NCBI GenBank assembly: GCA_965637545.1
Contig: OZ281499.1
Location: 26,846,001-26,910,000 of the forward strand
DNA length: 64,000 nt
Reading direction: 5' to 3'
DNA from: Phallusia mammillata
Taxonomy: Eukaryota
Positions within the stretch are counted from its first letter, which is position 1; every line of letters begins with the position of its first letter. The notes beneath the pieces are model-generated. The model saw nothing but the letters and a program-made list of their open reading frames with translations, made no database searches and was not told the DNA's origin. This document shows positions 227-64,000 of the stretch, in pieces. A program made the position numbers and the translations under genes.

Positions 227-799
227 ATGTACAAGCTGACTTTGTTGTTCGTGTTTTGTTTGATGTTCACTTGCATTGTTGGACCGCATACTTCAAACAA
301 TGGAGGGTTGGTGTAGTTGATTTAAACATTTGGTGATGAAGTTGTTTTATATAACATGGGAAATGTATAGCTCGTGTTACTGCTGTAAAGGCTGGCCTTG
401 GAACAATGTGTATGTTTTATGTTAAACTGTTCTTGATTATCTAAATTTTGCAAGTTGAAAAAAATCCAAAAATATTGGCAAACCTGATCAGCAACTTTGC
501 GCAGAGCTTCCGTACCTTGGGATGAGGACGGAGATAATAATTCGGAACAACTTTCGAAGGAAAGCTTGGATCAGTTGACCAGAGGTAAAATAGGCGCAAA
601 CTTCAACAGTTTAGTCCTGAAATAAGTTATAAATTGGCAAAGTTTAAATTTCGTTTTAAACGACTAAAATTGAAATCATACGAATGTTTGTTTGATCCGT
701 AACAAATTCTTCTTAGTTTTCTGGTATAAGTGAAAAATAATTCATTTGTCAGATGTCGAAGAGCTGGAATTGGATTTTCTAAATGAATTGGGATTGTAA
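227..799 (+). CDS. Secreted acidic prepropeptide, subtype D (D1), 68 aa; exons 227-306, 505-584, 753-799
   Basis: GT-AG introns of phase 2 and 1 give the open frame MYKLTLLFVFCLMFTCIVGPHTSNNGGASVPWDEDGDNNSEQLSKESLDQLTRDVEELELDFLNELGL*. The same exons recur at 1777-4189 and 59501-60176. Confidence 0.75.
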
Positions 800-1776
800 A
801 TAGATTGAAGAATGGATTTGTCGCTGGAATTTTAAATATTGTTGTCAATGACTTTGAATGCAATCAGTGTAAGAATGTTGGTATTTACTAAAGGAAAATA
901 AATACAGAATCGTGTAAATATTCTTAGCACATTGTATCGATTTAGGGCGAGTATTATCAGTTTACCAGCTTACGTTTCTGCATGTGTGGCGTGGTAGTCA
1001 AAAACACGATTTTTCTTAACGCATCTTTGAAACCTATGGCTAGACGCTTAAGAACAGGGTCACACAGCAAAACAAGGAACATGATGTAAATACACTGTAT
1101 TAAGTAACTTATGCCTTGTACAGGATTCAACTGTATAATAAATGTACAAGTTGACTTTTCTATTCATGTGCAATTGCATTGGTTGCAAAAAATACCATAC
1201 GTATAATTTTGCTTCATTGTTTCCAAAGGTTGCGAAAAAAGTAATTGTTAGGAGGAAACTGTTTGCCGTATGTTTTAAGAAAAGTGGCAGTTAAAAAGTC
1301 TTTGTTTAATTTTAACTCGTCAGTTTGAAGCGGTTGCTTGGTGCTAATCCAGTTGGCAGTTTTACTAACTTTGCCGATTTGAAAACTTTAAACAAACTAA
1401 TGATAAGTTTATTTTGGTTGGTAAAAAGTTGCAGCGGCATAATTGTCACCAAACCAGTATAGTTGTGTAGTATTTGAACGATATAAAGTGCAAAACGCGC
1501 ATGTCACAATACGGATCTTGCAGCTACACTGCAAAAACTTTCAGTTAAAAGTTAAACTTTCAAGATTGCATTTGTTTAAACAGGAAGAAGTTTGTTGTGC
1601 ATTTCCAACGATGGGTATTTGGCAGGGAAAAAGCCCAAGTTTTTTGATGGGGTTTAGCTTTTTTGTCTGATAACTTCACGACTCCAATTTAATTTGGAAA
1701 TTAGGCATGTTTGAAGCTTACAAAAGTATAAAAAAAATTGTGCTTTTTGCAGGTTTAAATCTGATAAACATAAAAG

Positions 1777-4189
1777 ATGTACAAGCTGACTTTGTTGTTC
1801 GTGTTTTGTTTGATGTTCATTTCCATTGTTGGACATACCTCGTCATTAACTTCGCATAATGGAGGGTTGGTATAGTTGATTTAAACCTTTGGTGGTTCAT
1901 TACGATGTTTTATTATGAGGTATGACAAAACTTTGCCACCCGAGAACAAAACAACGGAAAATGTGACAAATCTCCAGCCGTGTCACTACTTAAAAAAATT
2001 AGCACTTTGTCTTGAAATACTGCTTACATTTTATATCATACTGATGTAGGCTACGCAGTTTGCTCATTTTCCTTATTGATGATCTGTATCCTTATGTTTA
2101 AAACAAGTCAAAACAAATCCAACATATTTGCAAACCTGATCAGAAACTTTGCGCACAGATCTTCCGTACCTTGGGATGAGGACGGAGATGAAGATTCGGA
2201 ACAACTTTCGGAGGAAAACTTGGATCAGTTGACCAGAGGTGAGATGTGAGATTGGCACAAACTCAAAACAGCTTGGTCCTGAAATATGAATTTGTGAAGT
2301 TCAAAAATGAATCAAATAACTTTATGTAAACAATAAAGTATATAAAGCTCCATTGATGCCATAATCGATTTGTTCGAAATGATATGTTAATTACACTGGG
2401 CAACAAAAAAATATTTTTTTACTGGTGTCTGTAATGTTTTAAGTGATTTTGACTAATTCTAGTGCCCTGATTTCAAAAATGCAATCGGTTTATCTGTATC
2501 ACGTCTAGTTTTCCTGTTATGGTACATCCACGTTTGAAAAACGTGTATACACTAGTGAAACTGGTTTTGAGTATTTTATTTGGAATTGCAGCGTGTGCAA
2601 AGCTGACTCCGGTTAATAACTGAGCATAGCACAGACTTAAGTATCTACTTCACGAGTTTTATTACAAGCAACATAACAAACAGACGAACACAGATAACTT
2701 ACTTTTACAAGTTCAACGTAACATCAAGTTGACGAGCGATTAGTACATTAAGCGAATAAAGACAGAATATAATATTCGCACTTTGACCAGAATTTTAACG
2801 GTTGAAAGATAGAATCAGAATTGGAATGGAATGAATCTCAATGTTTGTGGCGTGGTATTTATAAGTCCGATATTTTACTTAATCAAGATTAGAATCGATA
2901 CGACGATACGATACGAGAGATAAGAAATTGGACACACGGGGATTAGAAATCAATGTACCAAAGTCATTACGCTTGATCGACTCAAGGTTAATAGGGTCGA
3001 CGAAAAGGGAAAAATATAAATTACAAAAAGCAATCTCGAGAAAAGAACAGATGTTTGCTGATTAATCCGGAGAGACCACGTGATTTGAACACGTGATTTG
3101 ATGCAGAATTAACATTATTTCAAGAACAATATTTCGAAATTAATTTTAAATGTAACAGGTGGACACTCCTAACAAACAAAATTCAACACAAAAAAACAAA
3201 AAAATGTTTCAAGTTTGTAAGTTATTAGGTATAGGCCTACACATGTACTTTGGTAACTTTCGAAACTGAGTGGCAGCAATATCGTCCCGTTTAATTGACC
3301 AACAGCAGTTAGCTAGGACCACATTATTCCATCTTCCCTGACACGTTTCGTTTTACTGATATCCTGTTGGAATCTTTCAGCTTAATTCTCATCATTTATA
3401 TCCCCTACGTTATAAGGGAAGTGTAGCTTTATACTTATTTTCGTACTCAATTTTTCAGACCGCTTAACAACTTAGTTATGTACTCTTTCTATTAATTTCA
3501 GTCCCTTTCTACTGTTTTTGTCCATTACTGCAATATTCCAATCAACATTAGGTAAGTGGAGCCCATTGCTTGTCCTAAACCCCTAAAGCCACATCGAAGT
3601 GTGCAAGATATGCACATTTGATACGGATCTCTTTTTTCTTTTTAGTTGTGTTGTATGGGTATTCACCAGTAATGTAGCATAAACCATCTTGGTAATTCAT
3701 GCAACACCTTTAGATGACCTAGCCACTATTAATTTTAGTTTTACCACCTTGCTTTACTAGTCTGAAAATCACTCCATAAAACATGTATAGTTTAAAGTTA
3801 CCGCTAGCCTGCACCAACCATTTTTAGACAGAGCATAAGCATAGAACGCATATTCATGCTATGAAACTGACTGCACTGTAGGAAATTAATGTGTTTAATG
3901 TAACAAAACTTTAACAAGCACATAAAAGCATGATTTAAAAGTCATTAAATCAATATGGTCATAAATTTAGATTTTGTAAATAACTTAAAAAGTTGACCTG
4001 GTTAAAGAAAACCGTAATGATTTTTGAAATCAGCACCCCAAAATTAGTCAATATCAATTTAAACATTAAAGACACCAAAAATTGTGTTGGCCAGTGTTAT
4101 TCCTGTTTAAAGTAAATAAAAATTGTTTGTCAGATGTCGAAGAGCTGGATTTGGATTTTCTAAATGAAACGGGATTACAAATGGATTAA
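1777..4189 (+). CDS. Secreted acidic prepropeptide, subtype D (D2), 74 aa; exons 1777-1865, 2159-2238, 4134-4189
   Basis: Spliced product MYKLTLLFVFCLMFISIVGHTSSLTSHNGGSSVPWDEDGDEDSEQLSEENLDQLTRDVEELDLDFLNETGLQMD*. Canonical splice sites; intron 2 is enlarged by a 1.7-kb transposon. Confidence 0.75.
2394..4096. mobile_element. Non-autonomous CMC/Chapaev3-like DNA transposon in D2 intron 2
   Basis: Termini CACTGGGCAACA / TGTTGGCCAGTG, 3-bp TTA duplication, subterminal inverted repeats (gactaatt...ctgatttcaaaaat). Absent from the homologous intron of D3 (~59550-59600). CAC ends with a TWA TSD fit Chapaev3. Confidence 0.7.
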
Positions 4190-5095: not shown

Positions 5096-5960
5096 ATGAC
5101 AAAGTTAAGTTTGTTGCTTGTCGTTTGTTTGTTAGTTGCAATGTTGGTTGATCCAGGACACAGCAAGAAGAAAAACAGAAAGAAAGCCACGGGTATATCT
5201 CCTATATTGGGAAGCAGCTACGGAGGGTGAGATGGTTTGTAAACAAGGATTTTTAAACATTTTCGTGTTCGGGATTTATGGGACTTGTTGTAATTTCGTC
5301 TGAGCTATAAGTTATTGTGGTAAATCAAGAGTATTCTGTCATGTGATGCTACCGATTAGATTTCACCACAAAAATGTTTTAGTCCCGCACACATATTTGT
5401 AAGACGGACCGGGTTTGTGAAGACGACAATTTTAAATAAAACTGACTTGACTTTGCCAAACTTCGTAAATTTCGGGCTTATATGAATTCAAATTCGGGAA
5501 GGGTTTTGGTTTGGACTTTTTCGGGCCAGCCGTCTACTCCACAGTCTCAAACTGTTTGTACAAGTGTTGGAGATCTGTGATTGAAATATCTGACCCAAAC
5601 CGAAAATTAAAACGGTGTATTTCCGGTAGCGATGTGCAGAATGAAATTTACTTTTGACACCAACTTGTATTTTGTAGTGGTGATTCAGATCAACTGGAAA
5701 AAGAAGACGCTCGAGAAAAACGAGGTAAACGTCACTGAGTAAATCTGAACCAAAATACAAGAGAGTTCAGTTAGTTGCATATCGGTTAATATTACATTCT
5801 GGATAATCGCAACAAGGTTGGAAATTATATTCTTAGCATGTGGCAAAAAGTTATCTTCGTTTGAACCAAAAGTAAGTTGCATCAATCAAAACATCTAAGC
5901 ACAATAATTTTTATTTCATCGCGTTTTCCAGACATTCGAAGCCAAATCAAAAAGAACTAA
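5096..5960 (+). CDS. Secreted prepropeptide, subtype C (C1, A-type exon 1), 68 aa; exons 5096-5226, 5678-5724, 5932-5960
   Basis: MTKLSLLLVVCLLVAMLVDPGHS-KKKNRKKATGISPILGSSYGG-GDSDQLEKEDAREKR-DIRSQIKKN*. Phases 2/1; exons 2-3 homologous to 26022-26282 and 57785-58125. A TAC>TAA change shortens exon 3 relative to the paralogs. Confidence 0.65.
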
Positions 5961-6846: not shown

Positions 6847-6859
6847 CGAGACAGAAGAG

Positions 6860-7411
6860 ATGACAAAGTTAAGTTTGTTGCTTGCCGTTTGTTTGTTGGT
6901 TGCAATGTTGGTTGATCCGGGACACAGCATGAAGAAATCCCCTATATTGGTGAGCGTCAATGGAGGGTAAGATGGTTTGTAAACACAAATTACAAGAATT
7001 GAATTTGCTTGCAACTGTCAGGAAATGTACAACCATGTTATAGGTGATCCAAATATTTTGCTTAAAACTTTTCCGCAGGGTTTCTATTCCCTGGGATTTC
7101 GAAAACAACGAAGATCTTGAAATGTTCGAAGATCTTCTTAGAGGTAACAAGTGTTGCTTACAAGATCTCACTTGAGGCGTTTGCAGTTTGTAATTTTTCC
7201 CATATTAAGTAAATATATCCGCAATGCTGTGGTTTAAACAACAAACTATAAATCTTCCCAGTGATATTAAATTTCCTCTTAAATACTTTTGTCAGGAAAT
7301 CGAACCCATAACTCCACGATTACAAAACCGATGGCATAGAATTAAACAAATATTTTATTTCTTGCAGATTTCAAAGATGAACTGATTGAAGAAGACAGAA
7401 TGAAAGGATAA
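6860..7411 (+). CDS. Secreted prepropeptide, subtype A (A1), 71 aa; exons 6860-6966, 7079-7143, 7368-7411
   Basis: MTKLSLLLAVCLLVAMLVDPGHS-MKKSPILVSVNGG-VSIPWDFENNEDLEMFEDLLRDFKDELIEEDRMKG*. GG|GTAAG and AG|GTAAC donors, pyrimidine-rich acceptors. Confidence 0.8.
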
Positions 7412-25687: not shown

Positions 25688-26282
25688 ATGACAAAGATAA
25701 GTTTGTTGCTTGTCGTTTGTTTGTTAGTTGCAATGTTAGTTGATCCAGGACACAGCATGAAGAAGAAAGACACTGCCCCGCATCCAAACTCTGTATTGGG
25801 AAGCAACAACGGAGGGTGAGATGGTTTTGTAAACAAGGTTTTGTAAACATTTTAGTGTTCGGGATTTTCCGGGCCTGTCCTTTACTCTGCAGTCACAAAC
25901 TGTTTGTACGAGTGTTGGAGACCTGTGATTGAAATATCTGACCCAAACCGGAGGTTAAACGGTGTATTTCCGGCATTGTTGTTTTGTGCAACTACGTTTG
26001 ACACCAACTTGTATTTTGCAGTGGTGATTCAGATCAACTGAAAAAAGCAGTCGCTCAAGAAAAACGAGGTAAACGTCACTGAGTAATTTATTTTCTTAGA
26101 ATGTGGTTATAAGTTGGTCAAACGACCTGCTGAGTTTAAACCAAAAAAGATCACATAAAAATACCTCATTCATATATCTCATTCCATCAATCAAAACATC
26201 GAACATAATCAAATTTATTTCATCCCTTTCAGTCATTCGAAGCCAAATCGAAAGCAACTACGCAGTGCCACCAGGGAGTTGA
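25688..26282 (+). CDS. Secreted prepropeptide, subtype C (C2, A-type exon 1), 74 aa; exons 25688-25815, 26022-26068, 26233-26282
   Basis: MTKISLLLVVCLLVAMLVDPGHS-MKKKDTAPHPNSVLGSNNGG-GDSDQLKKAVAQEKR-VIRSQIESNYAVPPGS*; canonical splice sites, phases 2/1. Confidence 0.7.
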
Positions 26283-28327: not shown

Positions 28328-28892
28328 ATGACAAAGTTAAGTTTGTTGCTTTTTGTTTGTTTGTTGGTTGGTTGCAATGTTGGTTGATCCAGGACACAGC
28401 ATGAAGAAATCCCCTATATTGGTGAGCATTAATGGAGGGTAAGATGGTTTGTAAACACAAAATACAAAACTTGAAATTTAATTGTCAGGAAATGTACAAC
28501 CAAGTTATATGTGATCCGAATATTTTGCCTAAAACTTTTCGTAGGGTTTCTGTTCCCTGGGATTTCGAAAACAACGAAGATCTTGAAATGTTTGAAGATC
28601 TTCTCAGAGGTAACAAGTGTTGACTACAATATATCGCTTGAGGAGTTTACAGTTTGTAATCTTCTCATATTAACTAAATACATCCGCAATATAAACCGCA
28701 ATGCTGCGGTTTAAACAACAAACCATAAATCTGCCCAGTGATATCACATTTTATCTTAAATACTTTTGTCAGGTCGGGAATCGAACCCACAACTCCACGA
28801 TTACAAAACCGATGGCATAAAATTAAACAAATGTTTTATTTCTTGCAGATTTCAAAGATGAACTGATTAAAAAAGACAGAATGAAAGGATAA
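28328..28892 (+). pseudogene. Subtype A copy A2, frameshifted
   Basis: A 4-nt duplication (gttg) in the signal-peptide codons gives an early TGA. Exons 2 (28545-28609) and 3 (28849-28892) are intact and near-identical to A1. Confidence 0.8.
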
Positions 28893-29832: not shown

Positions 29833-30731
29833 ATGACGAAGTTAAGTTTGTTGCTTGTGGTTTGTTTGTTTGTTGCAATGTTAGTTGATCCAGGACACAG
29901 CAAGAAGAAGAAACGAAAGAAAACCACAATCCCGGTTATACGCCCTGTACAAGGAAGCATCAATGGAGGGTAAGATGTTTTAAACAGTGATTTCAAGTTT
30001 GAAATTTTTTGGCAACTGTAAGGAGTTGGACATATACAACCGAGTTTCAAACGATCTAAATCAGGCGCGATGAAATCCTGGCATCGCATGCGGCCCATGA
30101 ACACTTTCAGCTTACCGTCAGGCAAATACAATGTGTGTTTATTTAGGAGGTAACAAGTGCTTTATGACGGTATAAACGCGTTTACTTTAGGTAATATTTG
30201 GGTTTCAAAACATGGTGTCGATTAGAACAGCAAAGTTAGTTCTTCAATACAAATGAGGTTTACTATTTGCGGCAAGAATTTGCCAAACGATAATGTGGCT
30301 CTCCATCTTCTCAGTCTTGGAACATTTTGAGTTGGATAATTTACACGAAACTTTTTCGCTGGGTTTCTATTGCCTGGGATTTGGAAAACAACAACGATGG
30401 GAATGAAGATCTTGAAATGTTCGAAGATCTTCTCAGAGGTAACAAGTGTTGCTTACAAGATCTCACTTGAGGCGTTTGCAGTTTGTAATTTTTCCCATAT
30501 TAAGTAAGTATATCCGCAATATAAAGCCGCAATGCTGTGTTTTAAACAACAAACCATAAATCTTCCCAGTGATATCAGATTTCTTCTTAAATTCCTTTGT
30601 CAGGTTGGGAATCGAACCCACAACTCCACGAGAACAAAACCGATGAAATAAAATTAAACAAATACTTGATTTTTCTTGCAGATTTCGAAGATGAACTGAT
30701 TGAAGAAGACAGAATGAAAAGGATAAACTAA
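29833..30731 (+). CDS. Subtype A copy A3 (exon 1 KKKKRKKTTIPVIRPVQGSINGG); intron-1 acceptor mutated AG>TG, possibly non-functional
   Basis: Exons 29833-29969, 30362-30438, 30682-30731 are open and in phase, but the acceptor reads tttttcgctg instead of cgcag. Confidence 0.55.
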
Positions 30732-31449: not shown

Positions 31450-31533
31450 ATTTAGAGGGCGAAGCTTGTTCCCGAGAATTATGTAAAGAATAATGCTTGT
31501 TGTATTAGCAGCTGATTTTAAGCAGAAGTTATA

Positions 31534-44530: not shown

Positions 44531-45525
44531 TCAAATATCTTCATTGTTGAGTTCTTCCTCGAAATCTACATTAAAAAATGTTTTAAACTTGCAATATTTT
44601 TTTAAAGTGAAGTAATAGGTTCGAACCCAAGTCCATGCAGGAAATGTACCGTATCATGATACGTATGTTCTGTGGAACATTCTAATTATGAATTGCATAA
44701 GAAACATTTCGTTGGTGCAATACTCGACTGTATCACGACTTTAATTAATTGGTAATAATAAATGATAATGCAACTTTTAGATGTCGGACTTAGGTTTTAC
44801 ATTTTGTTGGTGCAATATTTAACCATGTTGAGCTTTATAAAAAAAAACGTAAACGCCTCATTTAAAATGTCGAAATCAGGTTTTAACAATTCTGAACCTT
44901 CAAGAAGATCTTCCAACATTTTCAGCTTCTTTTTCTCGTTGTTGCTTCTTTTAAAATCCCATGCTACAGTGATCCTGTGAAAATTTCACGCAAAATACTC
45001 GATTACTTTAAACTACAAAGACAACGTGCAATTGAAAATGTTTTAAGTCTTGGAAACATTTAGATCAGGGGTGTGCAACCTTTATCATGGTGCATCTAAA
45101 TTAAATTTCCAGGATTAGATCGCGGGCCGCACCTTTATATAACACAAAATGATTTTAATTTATTGCATATTCTACCTGCTTTATTGTCCGGCCGCAGAAA
45201 TAATCTGCTCGTATAATAATTAAACTCGTTTGTTAGTACATTTGATTCTAGTCGAATATTGTCAGGTAACAGAAAGCAGCACCGGGCGCATTAATCTGCT
45301 CGAAAATGTATAATAATTGGACTCGTTTGCCAGTACATTTGAAATCTCAGCGTCTCTGCTGGCCGCACATTCTTTAGTTAAGGGCCGCATTTGGCCCGCA
45401 GGCCACAGGTTGCACACCCCTGGTCTATTCCACCACATGAACTTACCCTCCGTTGACACTTCGAACTTTTACAGCCAACTTCGCTTTTTTTCTCTTCTTG
45501 CTGCATCCTGGATCAACCAAAAAAT
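44531..45525 (-). pseudogene. Subtype B copy B2, 5'-truncated
   Basis: Exon 1 remnant ends at 45447, exon 2 is 44974-44898 (ITVAWDFKRSNNEKKKLKMLEDLLE), exon 3 is 44565-44531. The start codon and most of the signal peptide are replaced by D-type sequence. Confidence 0.75.
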
Positions 45526-45544
45526 GGTGAATTAGGCACAATTT

Positions 45545-45911
45545 CAGTTTTCCTCCGAATGTTGTTCCAAATCTTTATCTCCGTCCTCATCCCAAGCTAC
45601 GGAAGCTCTGCGCAAAGTTTCTGATCAGGTTTGTAAATATGTTTGAATTGTTTTGATTTGTAAAGTTTAGAAAATTGAGAAAACATAAAGCGGTAAGCAA
45701 ATGTTGAAAACATAAACAGTATTTGAAGACTAGACTTTACAGCGGTAACACGAACTGGAGATTTGTCATTATTTCATTTCCTAAAACATTGAAACAACTT
45801 AACCACCAAAGGTTTACATAAACTAACTAACCCTCCATTGACTGAAGTAAAAGGTCCAACAATGCAAGTGGACATCAAACAAAACACGTACAATAAAGTC
45901 AGCCTGTACGT
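45545..45911 (-). pseudogene. Subtype D copy D4 (ATG>ACG, exon 2 truncated)
   Basis: Exon 1 starts ACG TAC AGG CTG...; exon 2 (ASVAWDEDGDKDLEQHSEEN) breaks off and joins the B2 exon 1 remnant. Confidence 0.7.
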
Positions 45912-46624: not shown

Positions 46625-47166
46625 TCAAATATCGAAGAGCTCTTTAATGACATCTGCCAAAAAGATGAAGAAATAGTCATGTATATAGATTTATTTCTGC
46701 TAAAAGCAATGCCCACCTTGCATCAATTCGTCCACATTTTGCTCCGAAATATGTTTAGACTTCTGATGTGCTTCTTCCCAAGGTATGGTGGTTCTGGGAA
46801 CAAAATATTAAATCAGATTTACAAACACGTTTCTCTGTCATTGGCAAACACCAGATCGCAAAGTTGCATCTACATCCTAATTAACTGCGACCGGAAAAAG
46901 TCCGAACACGATTTGTCAATACAGTGGGATTTGGTTGCTACACATTTCAACTTCCTCGCAGCCTTTGAGCTAGCGAGTCAAAACCGAGCTATTTTGGTAA
47001 ACAAATATTGCAAAGTTTGCACAAATTATGTCGCAACCGCTACAAAATACCCCCCGCCATGTTTTTGAGCACTGAGCAACATATGGTCATTGCGGGATTG
47101 GGCATGAAAGTGGAGCACAAGAAAATACATGTCATACACAACACAAAACAGTACATAATTAATCAT
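46625..47166 (-). CDS. Divergent family member, subtype E, 73 aa; exons 47166-47051, 46793-46717, 46653-46625
   Basis: Same phase 2/1 layout: MINYVLFCVVYDMYFLVLHFHAQSRNDHMLLSAQKHGGG-TTIPWEEAHQKSKHISEQNVDELMQ-DVIKELFDI*. It has the IPWE motif and the GG| exon-1 end. The signal peptide is atypical, so exon 1 is the least certain part. Confidence 0.5.
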
Positions 47167-48464: not shown

Positions 48465-49406
48465 TTAAACATCTTCATTGTTGAGCTCTTCTTCGAAATC
48501 TACAGAAAAATAATTTTGTTTTAAACTTGTAATATTCTGTTATTCGTGACGATGTGGGTTCGAACCCAGCCTGGTTTTATGAAGGAAACGTTACATATTA
48601 GGATATTCTAATTGTATATTGTATAAGAAACATTTTGTTGGTGCAATATTCGAATATGTTTAGTTTTATAAAAATTAATTGCAAACGCCTCTCTTGAGAT
48701 GTCGAACTCAGGTTTAAACAGTTCTTAACCTTTGAAACGATCTTCCAATATTTTTAGATCCTCCTTCGCATTGTCGCTTCTTTCAAAATCCCACGCGATA
48801 GAAACCCTGCGCAAATATGACGCGAAATACTCCGATTACTTCAAACTACAAAGACGACTTGCACTTAATCATATTATAAGTCCTGGAAACATTTAGACCA
48901 GGGGTGTGCAATTTTTTTTACTGTAGGCCCAAAAACAATTACCGTGATTAGATCGCGGGCCGCACCTTTATACAACACAAGGTGATTTTGCTTGTGCGTA
49001 CCAAATATGCCTATCTTGAGTTAACAAGTAAAATCCACATTTGATTCTAGTCGCATATTGTCAGGTCACAGAAAGCAGCAACGGGCGCATTAATCTGCTC
49101 AAAAATGTATTATAATTGTACTCAATTTTTGTATAATTTTTATGTAATAATTGAAAAATTGAAAAGTTTGCCAGTACATTTGAAATCTCAGCGTCTCTGC
49201 TGGCCGCACAACCTTTAGTTAAGGGCCGCATTTGGCCCGCAGGCCACAGGTTGCACACCCCTGATTTATTCCACCACATACACTTACCCTCCGTTGACAC
49301 TTCGAACTTTTACAGCCAACTTCGCCTTTTTTCTCTTCTTGCTGCATACTGGATCAACCAAAAATGCCACCAACAAACAAACAACGAGCAACAAACGTAA
49401 CTTCAT
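48465..49406 (-). CDS. Secreted prepropeptide, subtype B (B3), 76 aa; exons 49406-49288, 48806-48730, 48499-48465
   Basis: MKLRLLLVVCLLVAFLVDPVCS-KKRKKAKLAVKVRSVNGG-VSIAWDFERSDNAKEDLKILEDRFKDFEEELNNEDV*; canonical splice sites. Confidence 0.8.
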
Positions 49407-50254: not shown

Positions 50255-51765
50255 TTAGTTTATCCTTTTCATTCTGTCTTCTTCAATCATTTCATCTTCG
50301 AATTCTGCAAGAAAAATAAAATATTTCCTTAATTTTATGGCCTCGGTTTTGTAATCGTGGAGTTGTGGGTTCGATTTCCGACCTGACAAAGGTGTTTATA
50401 AGAGAAATGTGATATCACTGGGAACATTTATGATTTGTTGTTTAAACCACACCATTGCGGCTTTATATTGCGGATATATTTACTTAATATGAGAAAAATT
50501 ACAAACTGCTAACGCCTCAAGTGAGATCCAACACTTATTACCTCTGAGAAGATCTTCAAACATTTCAAGATCTTCGTTGTTGTCGTAATCCCATGATTTT
50601 GTAGGGAATGATTTTGTAGGGGATGATTTTTTAGGGGATGATTTTGTAGGGGATGATTTTTTAGGGGATAATTTTGTAGGGGATAATTTTGTAGGGAATG
50701 ATTTTTTAGGGGATGATTTTTTAGGGGATGATTTTGTAGGGGATGATTTTGTAGGAGATGATTTTGTAGGGAATGATTTTGTAGGAGATGATTTTTTAGG
50801 GGATAATTTTGTAGGGGATAATTTTTTAGGGGATGATTTTGTAGGGAATGGTTTTGTAGGGAATGATTTTTTAGAGAATGATTTTGTAGGGAATGATTTT
50901 TTAGGGGATGGTTTTGTAGGGAATGATTTTTTAGGGGATGATTTTTTAGGGGATGATTTTTTAGGGGATGATTTTGTAGGGGATGATTTTTTAGGGGATG
51001 GTTTTGTAGGGAATGATTTTTTAGGGAATGATTTTTTAGGGGATGATTTTTAGGGGATGATTTTGTAGGGAATGATTTTTTAGGGGATGATTTTTTAGGG
51101 GATGATTTTGTAGGGGATGATTTTTTAGGGGATAATTTTGTAGGGAATGGTTTTGTAGGGAATGATTTTTTAGGGAATGATTTTGTAGGAGATGATTTTT
51201 TAGGGAATGATTTTTTAGGAGATGATTTTTTACGGGATGATTTTGTAGGGGATGATTTTTTAGAGGATGGTTTTGTAGGGAATGATTTTTTAGGGGATGA
51301 TTTTTTAGGGGATGATTTTGTAGGGAATGGTTTTGTAGGGAATGATTTTTTAGGGAATGATTTTGTAGGAGATGGTTTTTTAGGGGATGATTTTTTAGGG
51401 GATAATTTTGTAGGGGATGATTTTTTAGGGAATGGTTTTGTAGGGAATGATTTTGTAGGGGATGATTTTATAGGGGATGACTTTAAAGGGAATGATTTTA
51501 TAGGGAATGATTTTATAGGGGATAATTTTATAGGGGATGATTTTGTAGGGAATGATTTTTTAGGGAATGATTTTTTAGGGGATGATTTTGTAGGGGATGA
51601 TTTTATAGGGAATGATTTGATAGGGAATGATTTTATAGGGAATGATTTTATAGGGGATAATTTCGGGATTGTGGTTTTCTTTATGTTCTTCTTCATGCTG
51701 TGTCCTGGTTCAACCACCATTGCAACCAACAAACAAACGACGAGCAACAAACTTAACTTTGTCAT
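50255..51765 (-). CDS. Repeat-expanded subtype A gene A5: exons 1+2 fused (51765-50542), exon 3 at 50304-50255, one 1-nt frameshift inside the repeat
   Basis: Signal peptide plus KKNIKKTTIP, then 71 pentapeptide units running directly into WDYDNNEDLEMFEDLLR. One unit is 14 nt (T5 instead of T6 at ~51047-51051). With that base restored the product is 424 aa. Confidence 0.7.
50594..51663 (-). repeat. Coding 15-nt minisatellite, 71 units (K-S-[SF]-P-[KTI])
   Basis: Period-15 array gg(g/a)atgatttt(t/g)tagg on the plus strand; the 1064 nt of full units equal 71x15-1. Confidence 0.95.
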
Positions 51766-52649: not shown

Positions 52650-52755
52650 TTCCAACACATTTACAGCCAACTTCGCCTTTTTTCTTCTTGCAGCATCCTG
52701 GATCAACAAACATTGCCACCAACAAACAAACAACGAGCAACAAACGTAACTTCAT
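52650..52755 (-). pseudogene. Subtype B exon 1 fragment B4
   Basis: MKLRLLLVVCLLVAMFVDPGCCKKKK then a 2-nt deletion and truncation into the intron MITE; exons 2-3 are absent. Confidence 0.7.
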
Positions 52756-53364: not shown

Positions 53365-54213
53365 TCATTTTCTTCTTCTCTCTTCTTCAATTGTTTCATC
53401 TTCGGAATCTGCAAAAAAATTAAATATTTGTTTAAGTTTATGCCATCAGTTTTGTAATCGTGGAGTTTTGGGTTCGATTCCCGACCTGACAAAGGTGTTT
53501 ATAAGAGAAATGTGATATCACTGGGAAGATTTATGGTTTGTTGTTTAAAACACAGCATTGCGGCTTTATAATGCGGATATATTTACTTGAGAAAAATTAC
53601 AAACTGCAAACGCCTCAAGTGAGATCTTGTAAGCAACACTTGTTACCTCTGAGAAGATCTTCGAACATTTCAAGATCTTCGTTGTTTTCGAAATCCCACG
53701 CAATAGAAACACTATGAAACAAAAAAATTCAAATTATTTAGCTTAAAATGTTCCAAGGCTGGGAAGATGGAAGGCCAAATGAATGAGGACAAATACTTGG
53801 CAGACCATAAATAGGGACACTCATTTGCTGTTCTAATCGACGCCAGGTTTGGAAACCCAAATATACTTTAACTAAACGCGTTGATAGCGTCGTAAAGTAC
53901 TTGTTATCTCGTATATAAACACGCATTGTATTTGCCTGACTGTCAGCCGAAAGTGTTGATGGACCGCATGCGACTCACATGTCACAATTTGACCTGATTT
54001 ACATCGTTTGTAACTCGGTTGTATGTGACCAACTCCTCACAATTGAACTTGTATTTTGTGTTTAAAGCCATCTTACCCTCCATTGATTCTTCCCAATACG
54101 GGAGACAAACCCTGGATTTTGGTTTTCTTTCTTTTCTTCTTCTTGCTGTGTCCTGGATCAACCAACATTGCAACTAACAAACAAACGACAAGCAACAAAC
54201 TTAACTTGGTCAT
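53365..54213 (-). CDS. Secreted prepropeptide, subtype A (A4), 81 aa; exons 54213-54077, 53711-53647, 53408-53365
   Basis: MTKLSLLLVVCLLVAMLVDPGHS-KKKKRKKTKIQGLSPVLGRINGG-VSIAWDFENNEDLEMFEDLLRDSEDETIEEERRRK*; all splice sites canonical. Confidence 0.8.
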
Positions 54214-55144: not shown

Positions 55145-56913
55145 TTAGTTTATCCTTTTCATTATGTCTTCTTTAATCAGTTCATCTTCGAATTCTGCAA
55201 GAACATAAAATATTTGTTTAATTTTATTTCATCGGTTTTGTTCTCGTGGAGTTGTGGGTTCGATTCCCGACCTGACAAAGGAATTTAAGAAGAAATGTGA
55301 TATCACTGGGACGATTTATGGTTCGTTGTTTAAACCACAGCATTGCGGCTTTATATTGCGGATATATTTAATTATTATGAGAAAAATTACAAACTGCAAA
55401 CGCCTCAAGTGAGATCTTGTAACCAACACTTGTTACCTCTGAGAAGATCTTCAAACATTTCAAGATCTTCGTTGTTTTCGAAATCCCACAGAATAGGAAC
55501 CCTACGAAAAGTTTTATGCAAAATATTGAGATCATTTATAACTTGGTTTTGCATTTTCTAACAACTAATTTCAAGTTTTGTCATTTGTGTTTACAAAACA
55601 TCTTACCATTCGTTGATGGTCATCGATATAGGGATTAATTTTATAGGGGATTTCTTTATAGGGGATAATTTTATAAGGGATGATTTGATAGGGAATGATT
55701 TTGTAGGGGATGATTTTATAGGGGATGATTTCATAGGGAATGATTTTACAGGGGATGATTTTATAGGGAATGATTTTGTAGGGAATGATTTTGTAGGGGA
55801 TTTCTTTATAGGGGATGATTTTATAGGGAATGATTTTATAGGGAATGATTTTGTAGGGAATGATTTTATAGGGAATGATTTTGTAGGGAATGATTTTGTA
55901 GGGAATGATTTTATGGGGGATTTCTTTATAGGGGATGATTTTATAGGGAATGATTTTATAGGGAATGATTTTATAGGGGATGATTTTATAGGGAATGATT
56001 TTATAGGGAATGATTTTATAGGGGATGATTTTATAGGGGATGATTTTATAGGGAATGATTTTATAGGGAATGATTTTATAGGGGATGATTTTATAGGGAA
56101 TGATTTTATAGGGAATGATTTTATAGGGGATGATTTTATAGGGAATGATTTTATAGGGAATGATTTTATAGGGAATGATTTTATAGGGAATGATTTTGTA
56201 GGGAATGATTTTGTAGGGGATTTCTTTATAGGGGATGATTTTATAGGGAATGATTTTATAGGGAATGATTTTATAGGGGATGATTTTATAGGGAATGATT
56301 TTATAGGGAATGATTTTATAGGGAATGATTTTACAGGGGATGATTTTATAGGGAATGATTTTGTAGGGAATGATTTTGTAGGGGATTTCTTTATAGGGGA
56401 TGATTTTATAGGGAATGATTTTATAGGGAATGATTTTGTAGGGAATGATTTTATAGGGAATGATTTTGTAGGGAATGATTTTGTAGGGAATGATTTTATG
56501 GGGGATTTCTTTATAGGGGATGATTTTATAGGGAATGATTTTATAGGGAATGATTTTATAGGGGATGATTTTATAGGGAATGATTTTATAGGGAATGATT
56601 TTATAGGGGATGATTTTATAGGGGATGATTTTATAGGGAATGATTTTATAGGGAATGATTTTATAGGGGATGATTTTATAGGGAATGATTTTATAGGGAA
56701 TGATTTTATAGGGGATGATTTTATAGGGAATGATTTTATAGGGAATGATTTTATAGGGAATGATTTTATAGGGAATGATTTTATAGGGGATGATTTTATA
56801 GGGGATAATTTCGGGATTGTGGTTTTCTTTATGTTCTTCTTCTTGCTGTTTCCTGGTTCAACCACCATTGCAACCAACAAACAAACGACAAGCAACAAAC
56901 TCAACTTTGTCAT
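55145..56913 (-). CDS. Repeat-expanded subtype A gene A6, intact, 473 aa; exons 56913-55607, 55501-55437, 55194-55145
   Basis: Signal peptide, 79 K-S-[FS]-P-[IT] units, SMTINE, phase-2 donor TG|GTAAG, then WVPILWDFENNEDLEMFEDLLR-EFEDELIKEDIMKRIN*. Confidence 0.85.
55627..56811 (-). repeat. Coding 15-nt minisatellite, 79 units, with a 585-bp higher-order duplication
   Basis: Period-15 array; rare variant units (ttaca, ttatg) recur exactly 585 bp apart (55746/56331 and 55911/56496). Confidence 0.95.
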
Positions 56914-57784: not shown

Positions 57785-58637
57785 TTATCCCCCTGGTGGC
57801 CGTGCGTAGTTGTTTTCGATTTGACTTTGAATGTCTGGAAAACGCGATAAAATACAAATAACTGTGCTTAGATGTTTTGATTTCGATCTAAATACAGTAT
57901 TTTTTATGCAACTTATTTTTTTGTTTTAAACGCAGCAGGTCGATTGACCAACTTTTCAACCTCATGCTAAGATTACAATTTCCAATCTTGATGCGATTAT
58001 CCAGAACATAATATTAACCGTTATGCAACTAACTGAATCCTCTTGTATTTCGGTTCAGGTTCACTCAGTGACGTTTACTTCGTTTTTCTCGGTCGTCTGC
58101 ATCTTCCAGTTGATCTGAATCACCACTGCAAAACACAAGTTGGTTTAAAAAGTAGCACAACACAACGCTGCCGGAAATACACCGTTTTGATTTCCGGTTT
58201 GGATCAGATATTTGAAGGCTTCCATCACAAGCACAAACAGTTTTTTTCCTGCAGAAATGAGGACAGGCCCGAAAAATCCCGAACGCGAAAGTATAAACAA
58301 AAACCCGACCCGATTTCGGATTTATAACAGGTCGACATTTATGACACAAATTTGGCAAAGTCCAACTAAAAGCCAAACCCGAACTGTATTGCAACTACAT
58401 GTGTGCGGGAATAAAAACATTTTTGTGGTTAAATCTAATCGGTAGCAACACACGATAAAATACTTGATTTACCACAAGCATTTATAGCTGGGTTTGTAAC
58501 TTTAAAAAAATCCTGTTAAATTGAATTATTTACTACTTGATGAATCTTGACTTTCCTGGTTTGACGACAAAAGCCGACCTCGCAAGGTTTGTGACGACCA
58601 AAACGACGAGCAGAAGAATCAACGTATGTTTATTCAT
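57785..58637 (-). CDS. Secreted prepropeptide, subtype C (C3, own exon 1), 65 aa; exons 58637-58537, 58125-58079, 57834-57785
   Basis: MNKHTLILLLVVLVVTNLARS-AFVVKPGKSRFIN-GDSDQLEDADDREKR-NIQSQIENNYARPPGG*. The intron 1 donor (GTAGTA) is weak but in phase, and intron 1 is homologous to those of C1/C2. Confidence 0.65.
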
Positions 58638-59500: not shown

Positions 59501-60176
59501 TTATAATCCCAATTCGTTCAGAAAATCCAAATCCAGCTCTTCGACATCTGACAAACAATTTTTTTCTTTAAATAACTAACATGTCATTCCGAACAAATGG
59601 ATTATGACATCAATGTAACTTTATATACTATATATTGTTTATGTAAAGTTATTTGATTCATTTTTACACTTTACAAATTCATAATTAAGGACAAAGCTGT
59701 TTTGAGTTTGTGCACATCTCACATCTCACCTCTGGTCAACTGATCCAAGTTTTCCTCCGAAAGTTGTTCCGAATCTTCATCTCCGTCCTCATCCCAAGGT
59801 ACGGAAGATCTGTGCACAAAAGTTTGTGATCAGGTTTGTAAATATTTTGGATTTGTTTTGACTTGTTTTAACATAAGGAAACATATCATCAATAAGGAAA
59901 ATGAGCAAATTGCGTAGCCTACAATATATAAAATGTAAGCCGTATATCAAGACAAAGTGTTAAGTCTTTTAAGGAGTGACACGGCTGGAAATATGTCACA
60001 TTTTCCGTTGTTTTGTTCTCGGGTGGCAAAGTTTTGTCATACCTCATAATAAAACATCGTAATAAACCACCAAAGGTTTAAATCAACTATACCAACCCTC
60101 CATTATTCGAAGTATACCCTCCAACAATGCAAGTGAACATCAAACAAAACACGAACAACAAAGTCAGCTTGTACAT
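59501..60176 (-). CDS. Secreted acidic prepropeptide, subtype D (D3), 68 aa; exons 60176-60097, 59809-59730, 59547-59501
   Basis: MYKLTLLFVFCLMFTCIVGGYTSNNGGSSVPWDEDGDEDSEQLSEENLDQLTRDVEELDLDFLNELGL*. Confidence 0.78.
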
Positions 60177-61650
60177 CTTTTATGTTTATCAGATTTAAAC
60201 CTGCAATAAGCACAATTTTTTTTTATACTTTTGTAAGCTTCAAACATGCCTAATTTCCAAATTAAATTAAAGTCGTGAAGTTATTAGACAAAAAGGCTAA
60301 ATCCACACCAATAAAACTGAGGCTTTTTCCCTGCCCATCGTTGCAAATACACGACAAACTTCTTGCTGTTCCAAAAAATGTTATCTTGGAAGTTTAACTA
60401 CAAGTTTTTGCAGTGTAGCTGCAAGATCCGTTATTGTGACCTGCGCGTTTTGCACTTTATGTTGTTCTAATACTACACAACTATACTGGTTTGGTGACAA
60501 TTATGCCGCTACGATTTTGTACCACCCAAAATAAACTTATCATCAGTTTGTTTAAAGTTTTTAAATCGGCGAAGTTGATAAAACTGCCAACTGCATCAGC
60601 ACCAAGCAACCGCTTCAAACTGACGAGTTAAAATTAAACAAAGACTTTTGCAACCGCCACTGTCCTTAAAACATACGACAGAGAGTTTTCTCCCTTAACA
60701 ATTACTTTTCCGAAACCTTTGGAAACAATGAAAAAATGTGTTAACGTTTTCATCGAAACTATTCGTCAGCAAAATTTAGAACAACCTCTTCAAACTGACG
60801 GGTTAAAACTAAACAAAGACTTTTTTAACAGCCACTTTTCTTTAAACATACGGCAAACAGTTTTCCCTTAAAACAATTACTTTTTTCTAAAACTTTGGGA
60901 ACAATAAAAAAACATTTGCGTTGACATCTTAAGTTTCCATCAAAACTTTTCATCAGTAAAAAAACGTACGGTATGTTTTGCAACCAATGCAATTGCACAT
61001 AAAACAAGATAGTAAAGTCAACTTGTACATTTATTATACAGTTAAATCTTGCACAATGTCTAACCATGGGTTTTAATATTGTTTGATATTTGTGCAATAT
61101 CCCACAAATGCATGAACATTTGCTGATAAACTGATAATACCATTCCTTGGATCAATAAAAACACCAGCTAAATTTCACAGATTTTTGCATTTATTATACT
61201 CCAGTGAAAAGCAATCATTCTTGCATGTTGTCATGTAAAATCCATTGCTGGTTACATTTAAAGAAAACGACAACAATATTCAAATCCAGCGGATGCTTTG
61301 TCATTATCACTGCGATTTTCAACAACATTATCGCTTTGCGTCGTTTGTTTTGAGGACCCACTAGTACTTGGCGTAGTCATGGTTACAACTGACGGAGTCT
61401 GTATTGCAACGGTACGTTGTTTAGGCTTTTCTTTATCTTTAGATTTCGTTTTACTGCGCGTACCTTGGCTAACAGCCGATTTGATTACTTCGTGGAAACT
61501 TGGGTTATTCCCACAAGTTGCTTGGCGAATTGTTTTAGACAGTTTGACCGTTATTGATCATACACATTCAACAAAATACATGCAAGCAGTAATCAAACAA
61601 CAGCCAAGAATAATTTCAAATTCTGCTCACCTTTCGTGGGGCAGCTGAAA

Positions 61651-62289: not shown

Positions 62290-63605
62290 TCAATGTCATG
62301 AGTCTCGATCAACAAGGGTTTTGCACGTCAGTTTGTTTATTCAATCAACATGCTTATTCAAATAGAAGGTTTAAGAAACAAAACAAGTCGTTAGAAAGTA
62401 ATAATAACAACCTTTACTCATAATTTCAAGTTCTACTAGCAACAAACACATTACTCTAAAGCAACCATTTTGAACAGCAAGCAAATTAAGTTAACTGCTA
62501 TTGGGCTAAAACTGTTGTGACCAATTACATTAGCGGTGCGTTTTATCAATTCATAACACGTGGCAATAAACTGCACAACTATGCTCTGGCCATTGGCTCT
62601 TGCACAAATTTCCACAGAAAGTAACGTCCAATCACAACACGGTACAAAACATACGGTTAAAGCTCGCAAACACCAGATCACACAGTTGCATTTACATCCT
62701 AATTAACTGCGACAGGAAATATTACAAAGTCCGAACATGATTTGTCAATACAGTGGGATTTGGTTGCTATTCATTTTAACTTCCTCGCAGCCTTTCAGCT
62801 AGCGAGTCAAAACCGAGCTATTTTGGTAAACAATTATTGCAAAGTTTGCACAAATTATCTCGCAACCGCTACACGTGTAATCAGCGCCTTTTTCTGTTGC
62901 AGTTCGGTAGAGCTTTACACTTCTGATGTTGTGCGTTGTGTAAAACGTTTGCTGCCAGCGAAATCTTAATGCAGACTCATCAGACTAAGTGCTATATCTT
63001 ATGGATTCTGTACATAGGATTAAGCAAAGGTGTTGTTGTATAAAGCGTATGAAGCTGAACGAAGTTTAAATATAGACTCTGGCTTTTTATAGACTCAGGA
63101 AATCTGACACGTTTTATGTAATTGTTTCATCGTGCTTTAACTTTGGGTACATGCTTGATATATGATGTGTGACAAGGAACAAACGAATTCAAAATTAATA
63201 AAAGTTTCCTGACAGTTAAGAGTGGACCAGCTCCCTGGAAATTTGGTTTATTTCACGGGATGTTTAACTATTGGCACGGGAATACTTTTCGTTCAGCTTA
63301 TTTATTTGTGGCTATCAAACTCAGAAGTATGTCCTATCATCTACTTAAAATATTTTTTTGAAAATTTCGGAATGAAATCAGCATTCTTAATTTCTGCTGT
63401 TTTTTTTATTTTTTTCTATTTGTTCTTCCGAAATTCCAGCAGCACTCTTTGTGTAAGTCTTAGTGGAGAAGCAGCGTTTCCAACATTGATTCACTAAGTG
63501 TGCTCTCAACTTTTTTCCTTAATTTGCAAAATCAACTTTTATTTTTAAAATTATCTGAAGCATTGTCGCATCTGGATTTCGATTTCTGGTTTGTCCTCTG
63601 TCTTG

Positions 63606-64000
63606 TCAAATATCCCGACTGTTGAGTTCTTCCTCGAAATCTACACACACAAAATGTGAAGTAATATGTTCGAACCCGTGTCCATGCAGAAAATGTAACG
63701 TACTAGAATATTCTAATTGTATATTGCATAAGAAACATTTCGTTGGTGCAATACTCGACACGACTTTAATTAATTGATAATAATAAATGTTAATGCAACT
63801 TTTACATGTCGGACTTAGGTTTTCACATTTAAAATATTGGGTTATTCTAAGTGTATATTGTATAATAAACATTTTGTTTTTGTTGGTGCAATATTTAACC
63901 ATATTTAGCTTTATCAAAATAATTGCAAACGCCTCCTTTAATATGCCGAAATCAGGTTTTAACAATTCTTAACCTTCAAGAAGATCTTCCAACATTTTCA
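63606..64000 (-). CDS. Subtype B copy B5, partial (exon 3 at 63640-63606 and 3' part of exon 2 ending at 63974); the rest lies outside the window
   Basis: Exon 3 DFEEELNSRDI*; exon 2 tail KMLEDLLE with donor G|GTTAAG; intron homologous to B2. Confidence 0.65.

What the first reader, a model, noticed from the sequence alone, without database searches (positions are those of the whole stretch)
227..64000. Hidden 19-locus family of three-exon secreted prepropeptide genes with invariant intron phases
Seen: 19 loci (D1, D2, C1, A1, C2, A2, A3, B1, B2, D4, E, B3, A5, B4, A4, A6, C3, D3, B5). All complete copies share phase-2 and phase-1 introns except A5, which has lost intron 1. The layout is signal peptide + variable segment | acidic exon | short tail. 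About 11 look intact; most are absent from the ORF track because each exon is under 50 codons. Established: signal / cationic mature / anionic C-terminal propiece is the layout of ascidian antimicrobial precursors such as styelins and clavanins. Inference: a rapidly evolving host-defence or secreted structural peptide cluster under birth-and-death evolution. I do not recognise sequence homology to a named family.
Basis: partly seen in the sequence, partly recalled or inferred. Interest (0 to 1): 0.9.

Follow-up and report, generated by a model that had tools for sequence, protein, structure and literature searches.

The report
Orphan secreted-peptide gene cluster, sea squirt
The window really holds about 19 copies of a tiny three-exon gene family for secreted peptides (conserved signal, variable basic middle, acidic helical tail) that has evolved under protein-level selection, but no transcript or outside relative was found, so a defence role is only an analogy.

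Summary
I located all 19 loci, and their GT..AG splice sites and intron phases (2, then 1) are conserved. Ten genes are cleanly intact: D1-3, C1-3, A1, A4, A6 and B3. A3 and E are intact only if a nearby alternative splice site is used. A2, A5, B1, B2, B4 and D4 are broken, and B5 is cut by the window end.

Protein-level selection is visible:
- In the signal-peptide codons, 10 of 14 substitutions fall at third positions (P=0.004), with omega about 0.1.
- The acidic tail between subfamilies A and B has omega about 0.2-0.4.
- Among recent A copies, however, exons 2-3 are no better conserved than intron 2.

The C tail is only marginally similar to the PW(D/E) tail of A, B, D and E. C1 and C2 carry an A-type exon 1 joined within intron 1.

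Four RNA contig sets covered only a transposon inside D2 and none of the exons of D2, C1 or A1. Three protein searches, Pfam and two metagenome scans found no relative.

The layout matches published ascidian antimicrobial precursors (Ciona Ci-MAM and others). Sequence homology to them is not significant, and the basic segment is not an amphipathic helix. Function remains inferred. The scan noted a similar cluster on another piece of this genome (s1-375376), which I did not examine.

The parts
227..799 (+). D1, intact. Exons 227-306, 505-584, 753-799. 68 aa: signal peptide MYKLTLLF.., no basic segment, acidic PWD tail.
   Evidence: donor GG|GTTGGT, acceptor AG, phases 2 and 1, stop TAA
1777..4189 (+). 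D2, intact ORF. Exons 1777-1865, 2159-2238, 4134-4189. Intron 2 carries a roughly 1.7-kb repeat element (2389-4101). The stop is shifted by 3 codons.
   Evidence: one search places RNA contigs only on the intronic element
5096..5960 (+). C1, intact. Exons 5096-5226, 5678-5724, 5932-5960. A-type exon 1 joined to a C-type tail (GDSDQLEKEDAREKR / DIRSQIKKN).
   Evidence: upstream region and signal peptide are 83-95% identical to A1; homology to C3 starts in intron 1 at 5303
6860..7411 (+). A1, intact. Exons 6860-6966, 7079-7143, 7368-7411. 71 aa.
25688..26282 (+). C2, intact. Exons 25688-25815, 26022-26068, 26233-26282.
28328..28892 (+). A2, broken: a 4-nt insertion in the signal-peptide codons shifts the frame. 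Exons 2 and 3 (28545-28609, 28849-28892) are preserved.
29833..30731 (+). A3. The ORF is intact, but the intron-1 acceptor is TG instead of AG. Exons 29833-29969, 30362-30438, 30682-30731. An in-frame AG lies 30 nt upstream.
31534..32430 (+). B1, broken: a 1-nt deletion in the A-run of exon 1. Exons 31534-31651, 32085-32161, 32396-32430.
44531..45522 (-). B2, fragment. Only the 3' half of exon 1 remains (45522-45447), abutting the truncated D4 exon 2. Exons 2 and 3 are at 44974-44898 and 44565-44531.
45547..45911 (-). D4, broken: the start codon is ACG, exon 2 is truncated at 45547, and there is no exon 3.
46625..47156 (-). E, a D-like singleton. Exon 1 runs from 47156 to 47050 or 47044, exon 2 is 46793-46717, exon 3 is 46653-46625. 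Phase 2 holds only with the weak GTAGCG donor.
48465..49406 (-). B3, intact. Exons 49406-49288, 48806-48730, 48499-48465. 76 aa.
50255..51765 (-). A5. Exons 1 and 2 are fused by a deletion (51765-50542), with 71.5 copies of a 15-nt unit. The frame from the ATG leaves the exon-2 frame. Exon 3 is 50304-50255.
52661..52755 (-). B4, remnant: exon 1 with an internal deletion; no exon 2 or 3 found downstream.
53365..54213 (-). A4, intact. Exons 54213-54077, 53711-53647, 53408-53365. 81 aa.
55145..56913 (-). A6, intact. Exon 1 is 56913-55607 with 79 copies of a 15-nt unit (KSFPI/KSSPI; variable part +89). Exons 2 and 3 are 55501-55437 and 55194-55145. 473 aa.
57785..58637 (-). C3, intact. Unrelated exon 1 (MNKHTLILLL.., 58637-58537), then C-type exons 58125-58079 and 57834-57785.
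59501..60176 (-). D3, intact. Exons 60176-60097, 59809-59730, 59547-59501.
63606..64000 (-). B5, cut by the window end. The end of exon 2 is 64000-63974 and exon 3 is 63640-63606.
1142..1200 (+).
60971..61030 (-). Extra D-type exon-1 relic, the mirror copy of the one at 1142.

Best explanation
This is a lineage-restricted, tandemly and invertedly duplicated family of small genes for secreted prepropeptides. The genome is apparently an ascidian's, according to other notes of this scan.

Gene layout:
- Exon 1 gives a hydrophobic signal peptide, followed in A, B, C1 and C2 by a short, fast-changing polybasic segment ending in N-G-G.
- Exon 2 opens with the conserved x-S-(I/V)-(P/A)-W-(D/E) motif and runs into an acidic stretch.
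- Exon 3 completes an acidic amphipathic helix.

Shown here: the paralogy, the conserved splice sites and phases, purifying selection on the signal peptide and (between subfamilies) on the tail, and turnover by duplication, decay, recombination in intron 1 and a 15-nt repeat expansion.

Inferred: the proteins enter the secretory pathway. The acidic helical tail neutralises or chaperones the basic part during storage, as proposed for ascidian cationic peptide precursors. Proteolysis, perhaps at the polybasic run, at the R/K-D exon 2/3 junction, or N-terminal to D, then releases the active pieces.

A host-defence or granule-peptide role is the most likely function, but it is only an analogy. My odds are about 0.7 that some members are functional coding genes and about 0.3 that the function is antimicrobial or defensive.
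For: - Conserved GT..AG sites and phases 2/1 in all complete copies.
- Signal-peptide codons: 10 of 14 substitutions at third positions in A/C (P=0.004); pN 0.00-0.04 against pS 0.07-0.28; omega 0.08-0.11.
- Acidic tail, A against B and B1 against B2: omega 0.17-0.43, Fisher P down to 0.0008.
- Between A and B, exon 2 (82% identity) and the signal peptide (79%) stand above the other segments; intron 2 is next at 67%.
- Charge blocks and tail hydrophobic moment of 0.46-0.56 over 18 residues.
- AATAAA or ATTAAA lies 38-144 nt after the stop in 11 of 12 models. A pyrimidine tract plus AG lies 10-30 nt before each ATG, as expected for trans-spliced ascidian genes (spliced-leader notes).
- Published Ciona precursors have the same order of parts and family-conserved signal peptides. 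They are haemocyte-expressed and partly LPS-induced (PMC7387483), which could explain their absence from ordinary RNA sets.
Against: - No exon of D2, C1 or A1 is covered in four RNA contig sets from three studies.
- No protein with shared words was found for spliced A1, spliced D3 or the A6 ORF in the 5.8-billion-cluster collection. The collection did not return the window's own A6 ORF either, though a repeat-rich ORF may be missed.
- Within subfamilies, exons 2-3 change as fast as intron 2 (position 1: 0.28, position 2: 0.22, position 3: 0.31, intron: 0.31).
- Seven to nine of the 19 copies are broken or incomplete.
- The basic segments contain Pro and Gly and are unlikely to be helical. D and E have no basic segment.
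- No signal-peptide predictor was available, so secretion rests on inspection of the n, h and c regions.
Confidence: 0.5

Rival explanations
1. This is a dead or dying family. An ancestral peptide gene was amplified by segmental duplication, and the copies now drift as unexpressed pseudogenes. The intact ORFs survive only because they are short and the duplications are young.
For: - No RNA coverage of the exons and no protein on record.
- Exons 2-3 are no better conserved than intron 2 among A copies.
- Seven to nine of 19 copies are visibly broken or incomplete.
- Whole blocks, introns included, align at 82-90% identity.
Against: - Third-position bias and omega of about 0.1 in the signal-peptide codons of copies that have diverged by 7-28% at synonymous sites.
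- Omega of 0.17-0.43 in the tail at the A-B and B1-B2 distances.
- Splice sites are kept in all intact copies.
- The only indel within exon 2 of the A copies is an in-frame 12-nt insertion in A3.
Confidence: 0.2
2. These are precursors of signalling peptides (neuropeptide-like or hormone-like). Cleavage at the polybasic run and at the basic residue before exon 3 would release short peptides, with the acidic parts acting as spacers.
For: - Runs such as KKKKRKK directly after the signal peptide.
- EKR|D in the C tail and R/K|D at the exon 2/3 junction in A, B and D.
- A conserved central core, SxNGG-xS(I/V)PW(D/E).
Against: - A tandem cluster of about 19 copies with a fast-changing middle and frequent gene death is unusual for neuropeptide genes (my general knowledge).
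- There is no Gly-basic amidation site in the usual order.
- No relative was found in any search.
Confidence: 0.12
3. These are secreted structural or adhesive material. Polycation and polyanion blocks (A6 carries +89 in its repeat against -9 in its tail; D members are anion-only) would associate by charge, for example in tunic, granule matrix or adhesive secretions.
For: - A6 and A5 carry 79 and 71.5 copies of a 15-nt unit encoding Lys/Pro/Ser-rich pentapeptides.
- The composition resembles extensin-like wall proteins, but below threshold: Pfam gives 95.6 bits against a cutoff of 105, and the atlas scores are at most 0.73.
- Anion-only D genes sit beside the cationic ones.
Against: - Most members encode only about 45-60 residues after the signal peptide.
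- A5 is frameshifted.
- The similarity to structural proteins is compositional only.
Confidence: 0.1

Closest known systems
Ciona intestinalis linear cationic antimicrobial peptide precursors (Ci-MAM, Ci-PAP and Ci-META4/6-like candidates; PMC7387483)
   Same: - Precursors of 50-100 aa.
- Signal peptide conserved within each family.
- Cationic part followed by an anionic helical C-terminal region, in that order.
- Small multigene families.
- Many Ciona tails begin W-N-(E/Q), and here they begin W-(D/E).
   Different: - No significant sequence similarity. A profile of eight Ciona tails scored A and B tails no better than shuffles; D reached about 0.02 and E about 0.07.
- The basic segment here is a Lys-rich run plus a Pro/Gly linker, not an amphipathic helix.
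- D and E lack a basic part.
- I could not compare the gene structure of the Ciona genes.
Styelins and clavanins of Styela clava, and botryllin of Botryllus schlosseri (refs 36 and 37 of PMC7387483; PMC9966394)
   Same: These are ascidian haemocyte prepropeptides with a signal peptide, a cationic mature peptide and a removed propiece. Cleavage N-terminal to D or DD is reported for styelins and clavanins.
   Different: The mature peptides are helical, amphipathic and aromatic- or His-rich. Botryllin is a 158-aa precursor. No sequence relation to this family was detectable.
Gene families with a conserved signal peptide and a hypervariable mature part, such as frog preprodermaseptins and cone-snail toxin superfamilies (from my general knowledge, not tested here)
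   Same: Strong conservation of the signal-peptide exon next to a rapidly diverging secreted part; tandem duplication with gene death.
   Different: - The order of the parts differs: in frogs the acidic propiece precedes the mature peptide.
- The taxa are unrelated.
- The conotoxin scaffold is cysteine-rich, whereas these peptides are essentially Cys-free.

Membership tests
Ascidian LCAMP-type precursor (Ci-MAM / Ci-PAP kind, as defined in PMC7387483) | N-terminal signal peptide, conserved within the family | tested here: met
   The signal region has an n-region with Lys, 14-15 hydrophobic residues, and small residues at -3 and -1 (G-H-S), judged by eye. Signal-peptide codons are 79-95% identical with omega of about 0.1. 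No SignalP run was possible.
Ascidian LCAMP-type precursor (Ci-MAM / Ci-PAP kind, as defined in PMC7387483) | Short precursor (50-100 aa) without cysteines in the secreted part | tested here: met
   Precursors are 65-87 aa, except A6 (473 aa) and A5. Cysteines occur only in the signal region. E exon 1 is Cys-rich.
Ascidian LCAMP-type precursor (Ci-MAM / Ci-PAP kind, as defined in PMC7387483) | Cationic amphipathic alpha-helical segment after the signal peptide | tested here: not met
   The segments are Lys/Arg runs followed by Pro- and Gly-containing linkers such as ..TKIQGLSPVLGRINGG. D and E have no net positive segment. This is judged from composition and hydrophobic moment only; no secondary-structure predictor was run.
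Ascidian LCAMP-type precursor (Ci-MAM / Ci-PAP kind, as defined in PMC7387483) | Anionic helical C-terminal region | tested here: met
   A, B and D tails have a net charge of -8 to -16 and an 18-residue hydrophobic moment of 0.46-0.56. This is not met for the C tail, whose charge is 0 to -4.
Ascidian LCAMP-type precursor (Ci-MAM / Ci-PAP kind, as defined in PMC7387483) | Sequence homology to a named Ciona family | tested here: inconclusive
   An HMM of eight Ciona W-N-E/Q tails gave these fractions of 300 shuffles scoring at least as well: D 5-7, E 20, A and B 98-229.
Ascidian LCAMP-type precursor (Ci-MAM / Ci-PAP kind, as defined in PMC7387483) | Expression in haemocytes and antimicrobial activity of the cationic peptide | not testable with these tools
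   It showed no exon coverage in four RNA contig sets of unknown tissue.
   A, B, D and E share xS(I/V)(P/A)W(D/E) and a D-x-x-EL exon 3. The C tail lacks the motif. C against D2/D3 exon 2 gave P of 0.025-0.048, and at protein level 0.065-0.37. C1 and C2 share only exon 1 and the upstream region with A.

The most novel reading that the evidence does not exclude
The conserved, selected element may be the acidic PW(D/E) helical tail rather than the basic part. On this reading the cluster is a modular system: promoter-plus-signal exons are recombined within a phase-2 intron with alternative tail modules, and cation-rich (A6), zwitterionic (A, B) and anion-only (D) products act together. They could act as charge-paired granule or tunic components, or as a new ascidian-specific peptide class with no counterpart among known antimicrobial precursors.
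Probability: 0.15. Interest if true: 0.7.

Novelty: new variant of a known kind. Interest (0 to 1): 0.45.

Why it matters
If these genes are expressed, they add an unannotated, fast-evolving secreted-peptide family to ascidian biology. Its exons are too short for ordinary gene finders, so it illustrates how much small-peptide coding capacity is missed.

The cluster also records several evolutionary processes in one 64-kb stretch:
- exon-1 exchange within a phase-compatible intron;
- expansion of a 15-nt unit to 79 copies, which turns a 70-aa precursor into a 473-aa polycation;
- loss of the cationic part in one subfamily.

It offers testable candidates for invertebrate-chordate host defence or secretory-granule biology. 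Without transcripts, its value is as a well-defined hypothesis rather than a discovery.

Tried and rejected
- RNA support. One runs search and one reads call on 1700-7600 (D2, C1, A1) with four RNA contig sets placed contigs only on 2390-4100, a multi-copy element in D2 intron 2 at 92-99% identity, and none on any exon. This is uninformative rather than negative, because contigs drop rare transcripts and the tissues are unknown.
- Word-indexed protein searches with spliced A1, the A6 ORF and spliced D3 found nothing. The A1 query also covers A and C1/C2 products through shared signal-peptide words.
- An exact look-up of a 212-aa window ORF, meant to test whether this genome is in the collection, found nothing on record.
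- Pfam on A1, D3 and A6 gave only a sub-threshold compositional Extensin_1 match for A6. The ESM atlas on A6 gave scores of at most 0.73 to extensin-like, apidaecin-like and other repeat proteins, which are leads only.
- Two metagenome scans with exon-2 cores gave no hit for the A core and one hit for the D core (L001). L001 is a GC-rich bacterial-looking contig and a chance 21-mer match.
- A Rfam search of the whole window found only one tRNA.
- A look-up of earlier findings by sequence was blank.
- The E-like stretch at 62666-62873 is a copy of E intron 1 only, with no exons beside it.
- Not attempted: structure prediction and the exhaustive HMMER search. Both accept only contiguous window sequence, and the spliced products have no reference.

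Full report
**What the window is.** The window is AT-rich (34-41% GC) eukaryotic DNA with no N runs. A self-comparison shows many duplicated blocks at 70-90% identity. These include large inverted duplications (28412-31217 against 55633-52855; 30402-32827 against 50578-48063), so the left half carries + strand genes and the right half carries their - strand mirror copies. Other agents' notes on this genome describe sea-squirt-type genes and the ascidian spliced leader. I did not test the taxon myself.

**Checking the observation.** Starting from the first locus, I searched the window with the peptide pieces of D1, A1 and C1. I read the splice sites of every hit, aligned the exon-1 regions and built explicit models.

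- Exon 1 ends in phase 2 at ..GG|GT in A, B, C1, C2 and D. C3 ends at AA|GTAGTA and A6 at TG|GTAAGA.
- Exon 2 begins after AG and ends in phase 1 before GT(A/G)A.
- Exon 3 begins after AG.
- Ten genes read through cleanly: D1, D2, D3, C1, C2, C3, A1, A4, A6, B3.
- A3 has TG in place of the intron-1 acceptor, with an in-frame AG 30 nt upstream.
- E keeps phase 2 only with a weak GTAGCG donor; the first GT gives phase 1.
- A2 (4-nt insertion), B1 (1-nt deletion), B2 (half of exon 1 missing, abutting D4), D4 (ACG start, truncated), B4 (exon-1 remnant only) and A5 are broken.
- B5 runs off the window.

A5's 'intron loss' is a deletion from inside its 15-nt array into exon 2. The frame set by its ATG is not the frame of the WDYDNNEDLEMFEDLLR stretch that follows. 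Tandem Repeats Finder gives 71.5 copies in A5 and 79.0 in A6. Two more D-type exon-1 relics lie at 1142(+) and 61030(-).

**Are these coding genes?** Three tests address this.

1. Signal-peptide codons. Across the seven A/C copies, 10 of 14 minimum substitutions are at third positions (binomial P=0.004). Pairwise pN is 0.00-0.04 against pS of 0.07-0.28, giving omega of about 0.1.
2. The acidic tail (exons 2+3). Between subfamilies A and B, and between B1 and B2, pN is about 0.12-0.24 against pS of 0.46-0.65. That is omega 0.17-0.43, with Fisher P down to 0.0008. These pairs are not independent.
3. Segment identity between A1 and B3. The signal peptide (79% identity, z 4.3) and exon 2 (82%, z 3.9) stand out. 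Intron 2 is next (67%, z 3.0), and intron 1 and the flanks are not above shuffles.

Against this, exons 2-3 within subfamilies change as fast as intron 2. Minimum substitutions per site are 0.28, 0.22 and 0.31 for codon positions 1-3 and 0.31 for the intron (pairwise values).

In the A family the 3' block (exon 2, intron 2, exon 3) differs by only 5-12%, while intron 1 differs by 10-40%. Intron 1 comes in two length classes, about 105-112 nt in A1, A2 and A6 and about 365-392 nt in A3 and A4. This suggests homogenisation or re-assortment of 5' and 3' modules.

Taken together, the family has been under protein-level constraint over its longer history. The youngest copies are too similar, or too relaxed, to show it in the tail.

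**Anatomy of the products.**

- A and B: a signal peptide (MTKLSLLLVVCLLVAMLVDPGHS or MKLRLLLVVCLLVAFLVDPVCS), then a basic variable segment (+2 to +9; +89 in A6) ending in NGG. Next comes xSI(P/A)WDFE.. and an acidic stretch. Exon 3 (DF(K/E)(D/E)EL..) completes a tail with a net charge of -8 to -11 and a hydrophobic moment of 0.46-0.56 over 18 residues, consistent with an acidic amphipathic helix.
- D: a related signal peptide (50% identical to the A type), essentially no variable segment, and a longer acidic tail (-11 to -16).
- E: D-like, with a less acidic tail (-5).
- C1 and C2: these share their upstream region (83% identical) and signal peptide (95%) with A1. Their exons 2-3 (GDSDQLEKEDAREKR / DIRSQIKKN) lack the PW(D/E) motif and are not anionic.
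- C3: it has the C-type introns and tail but an unrelated exon 1 (MNKHTLILLL..). The C1-C3 homology begins inside intron 1, at 5303 against 58489. Similarity of the C tail to the D tail is marginal (P 0.025-0.07), so the '19-locus family' may be 16 PW(D/E)-tail genes plus 3 C-tail genes joined by a shared exon 1.

Each ATG is preceded within 10-30 nt by a pyrimidine tract and AG. AATAAA or ATTAAA follows the stop within 38-144 nt in 11 of 12 models. The polyadenylation motif is weak evidence in AT-rich DNA. I read the upstream AGs as possible trans-splice acceptors, which is an inference.

**Expression and outside relatives.** When four of them were laid on the stretch, they covered only 2390-4100, a repeat element in D2 intron 2, at 92-99% identity. 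They covered no exon of D2, C1 or A1. Contigs show presence, not absence, and the runs were selected through that repeat, so this is a failed attempt rather than a refutation.

Other searches also found nothing:
- Spliced A1, the A6 ORF and spliced D3 had no relative in the word-indexed protein collection. The collection also lacks a 212-aa window ORF, so it may not hold this genome's products at all.
- Pfam gave only a sub-threshold compositional Extensin_1 match for A6.
- The ESM atlas gave only low-score repeat-protein look-alikes.
- The metagenome scans gave nothing for the A core and one chance 21-mer match, in a GC-rich bacterial-looking contig, for the D core.

[quoted passage not shown] Their signal peptides are conserved within families. 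Some of the genes are LPS-inducible in haemocytes, and styelins and clavanins are cleaved N-terminal to D or DD.

The layout here is the same for A and B. Many Ciona tails in that paper's Table 1 begin W-N-(E/Q) just after the basic part, reminiscent of the W-(D/E) here. I tested this with a profile of eight Ciona tails against our tails and 300 composition-preserving shuffles each. D scored above all but 5-7 shuffles and E above all but 20, while A and B were no better than shuffles. Homology is therefore not established.

The defining cationic amphipathic helix is not met, because the basic parts are Lys runs with Pro/Gly linkers. I therefore file this as a variant of the kind, not as a member of a named family. 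Botryllin (PMC9966394) is a longer, styelin-like precursor and is no closer.

**Verdict.** Transcription is unproven and the defence function is only an analogy. The main rival, a decaying unexpressed family, keeps about 0.2. Signalling-peptide and structural or charge-pairing roles are minor alternatives.

Noticed in passing
window 8117-8826, 10386-12953, 15244-17312, 35201-37573, 43315-43781: A second duplicated gene family is interleaved with the peptide genes. It has a signal peptide (MNKILAVVLLVALMLLEAQLV), Cys-rich exons with a CCQND(D/E)CN motif, and long Thr-rich stretches. Pfam found nothing on single exons.
   Followed up: partly
window 2389-4101: A repeat element of about 1.7 kb lies inside D2 intron 2. 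It is the only part of 1700-7600 present in four RNA contig sets, at 92-99% identity. Some contigs skip 2582-3106 and run on into unrelated sequence, so it is a multi-copy and possibly transcribed element.
   Followed up: partly
window 7290-7345 and the matching place in intron 2 of A2, A3, A4 and A6: Intron 2 of every aligned A-type gene contains, on the antisense strand, a stretch that looks like the 3' half of a tRNA (..GGGAATCGAACCC..). It is as well conserved as the exons and may be a SINE remnant. ARAGORN does not call it.
   Followed up: partly
window 12209-12284 (+): A single tRNA-Ser (anticodon GGA) gene lies between the LU-like genes.
   Followed up: no
window 22536-23048 (-), 33282-33797 (+), 40171-40470 (-), 41811-42338 (-): Transposon remains are present. 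One ORF has a weak hAT dimerisation-domain match and one passes the GIY-YIG threshold, as in Penelope-like elements. A third ORF looks gag-like by eye but has no Pfam hit.
   Followed up: partly
window 62666-62873: This is a 91%-identical copy of E intron 1 only, starting at the position of the alternative GTAGCG donor, with no E-like exons beside it.
   Followed up: yes
window, 10-30 nt upstream of the ATGs at 227, 1777, 5096, 6860, 29833, 49406, 54213, 56913, 60176: A pyrimidine tract followed by AG lies just before each start codon. These could be spliced-leader trans-splice acceptors if the genome is an ascidian's, as other notes say.
   Followed up: no
window 28412-32827 against 55633-48063: A large inverted segmental duplication at 82-88% identity carries A, B and flanking sequence, giving the cluster a roughly mirror-image layout.
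   Followed up: partly
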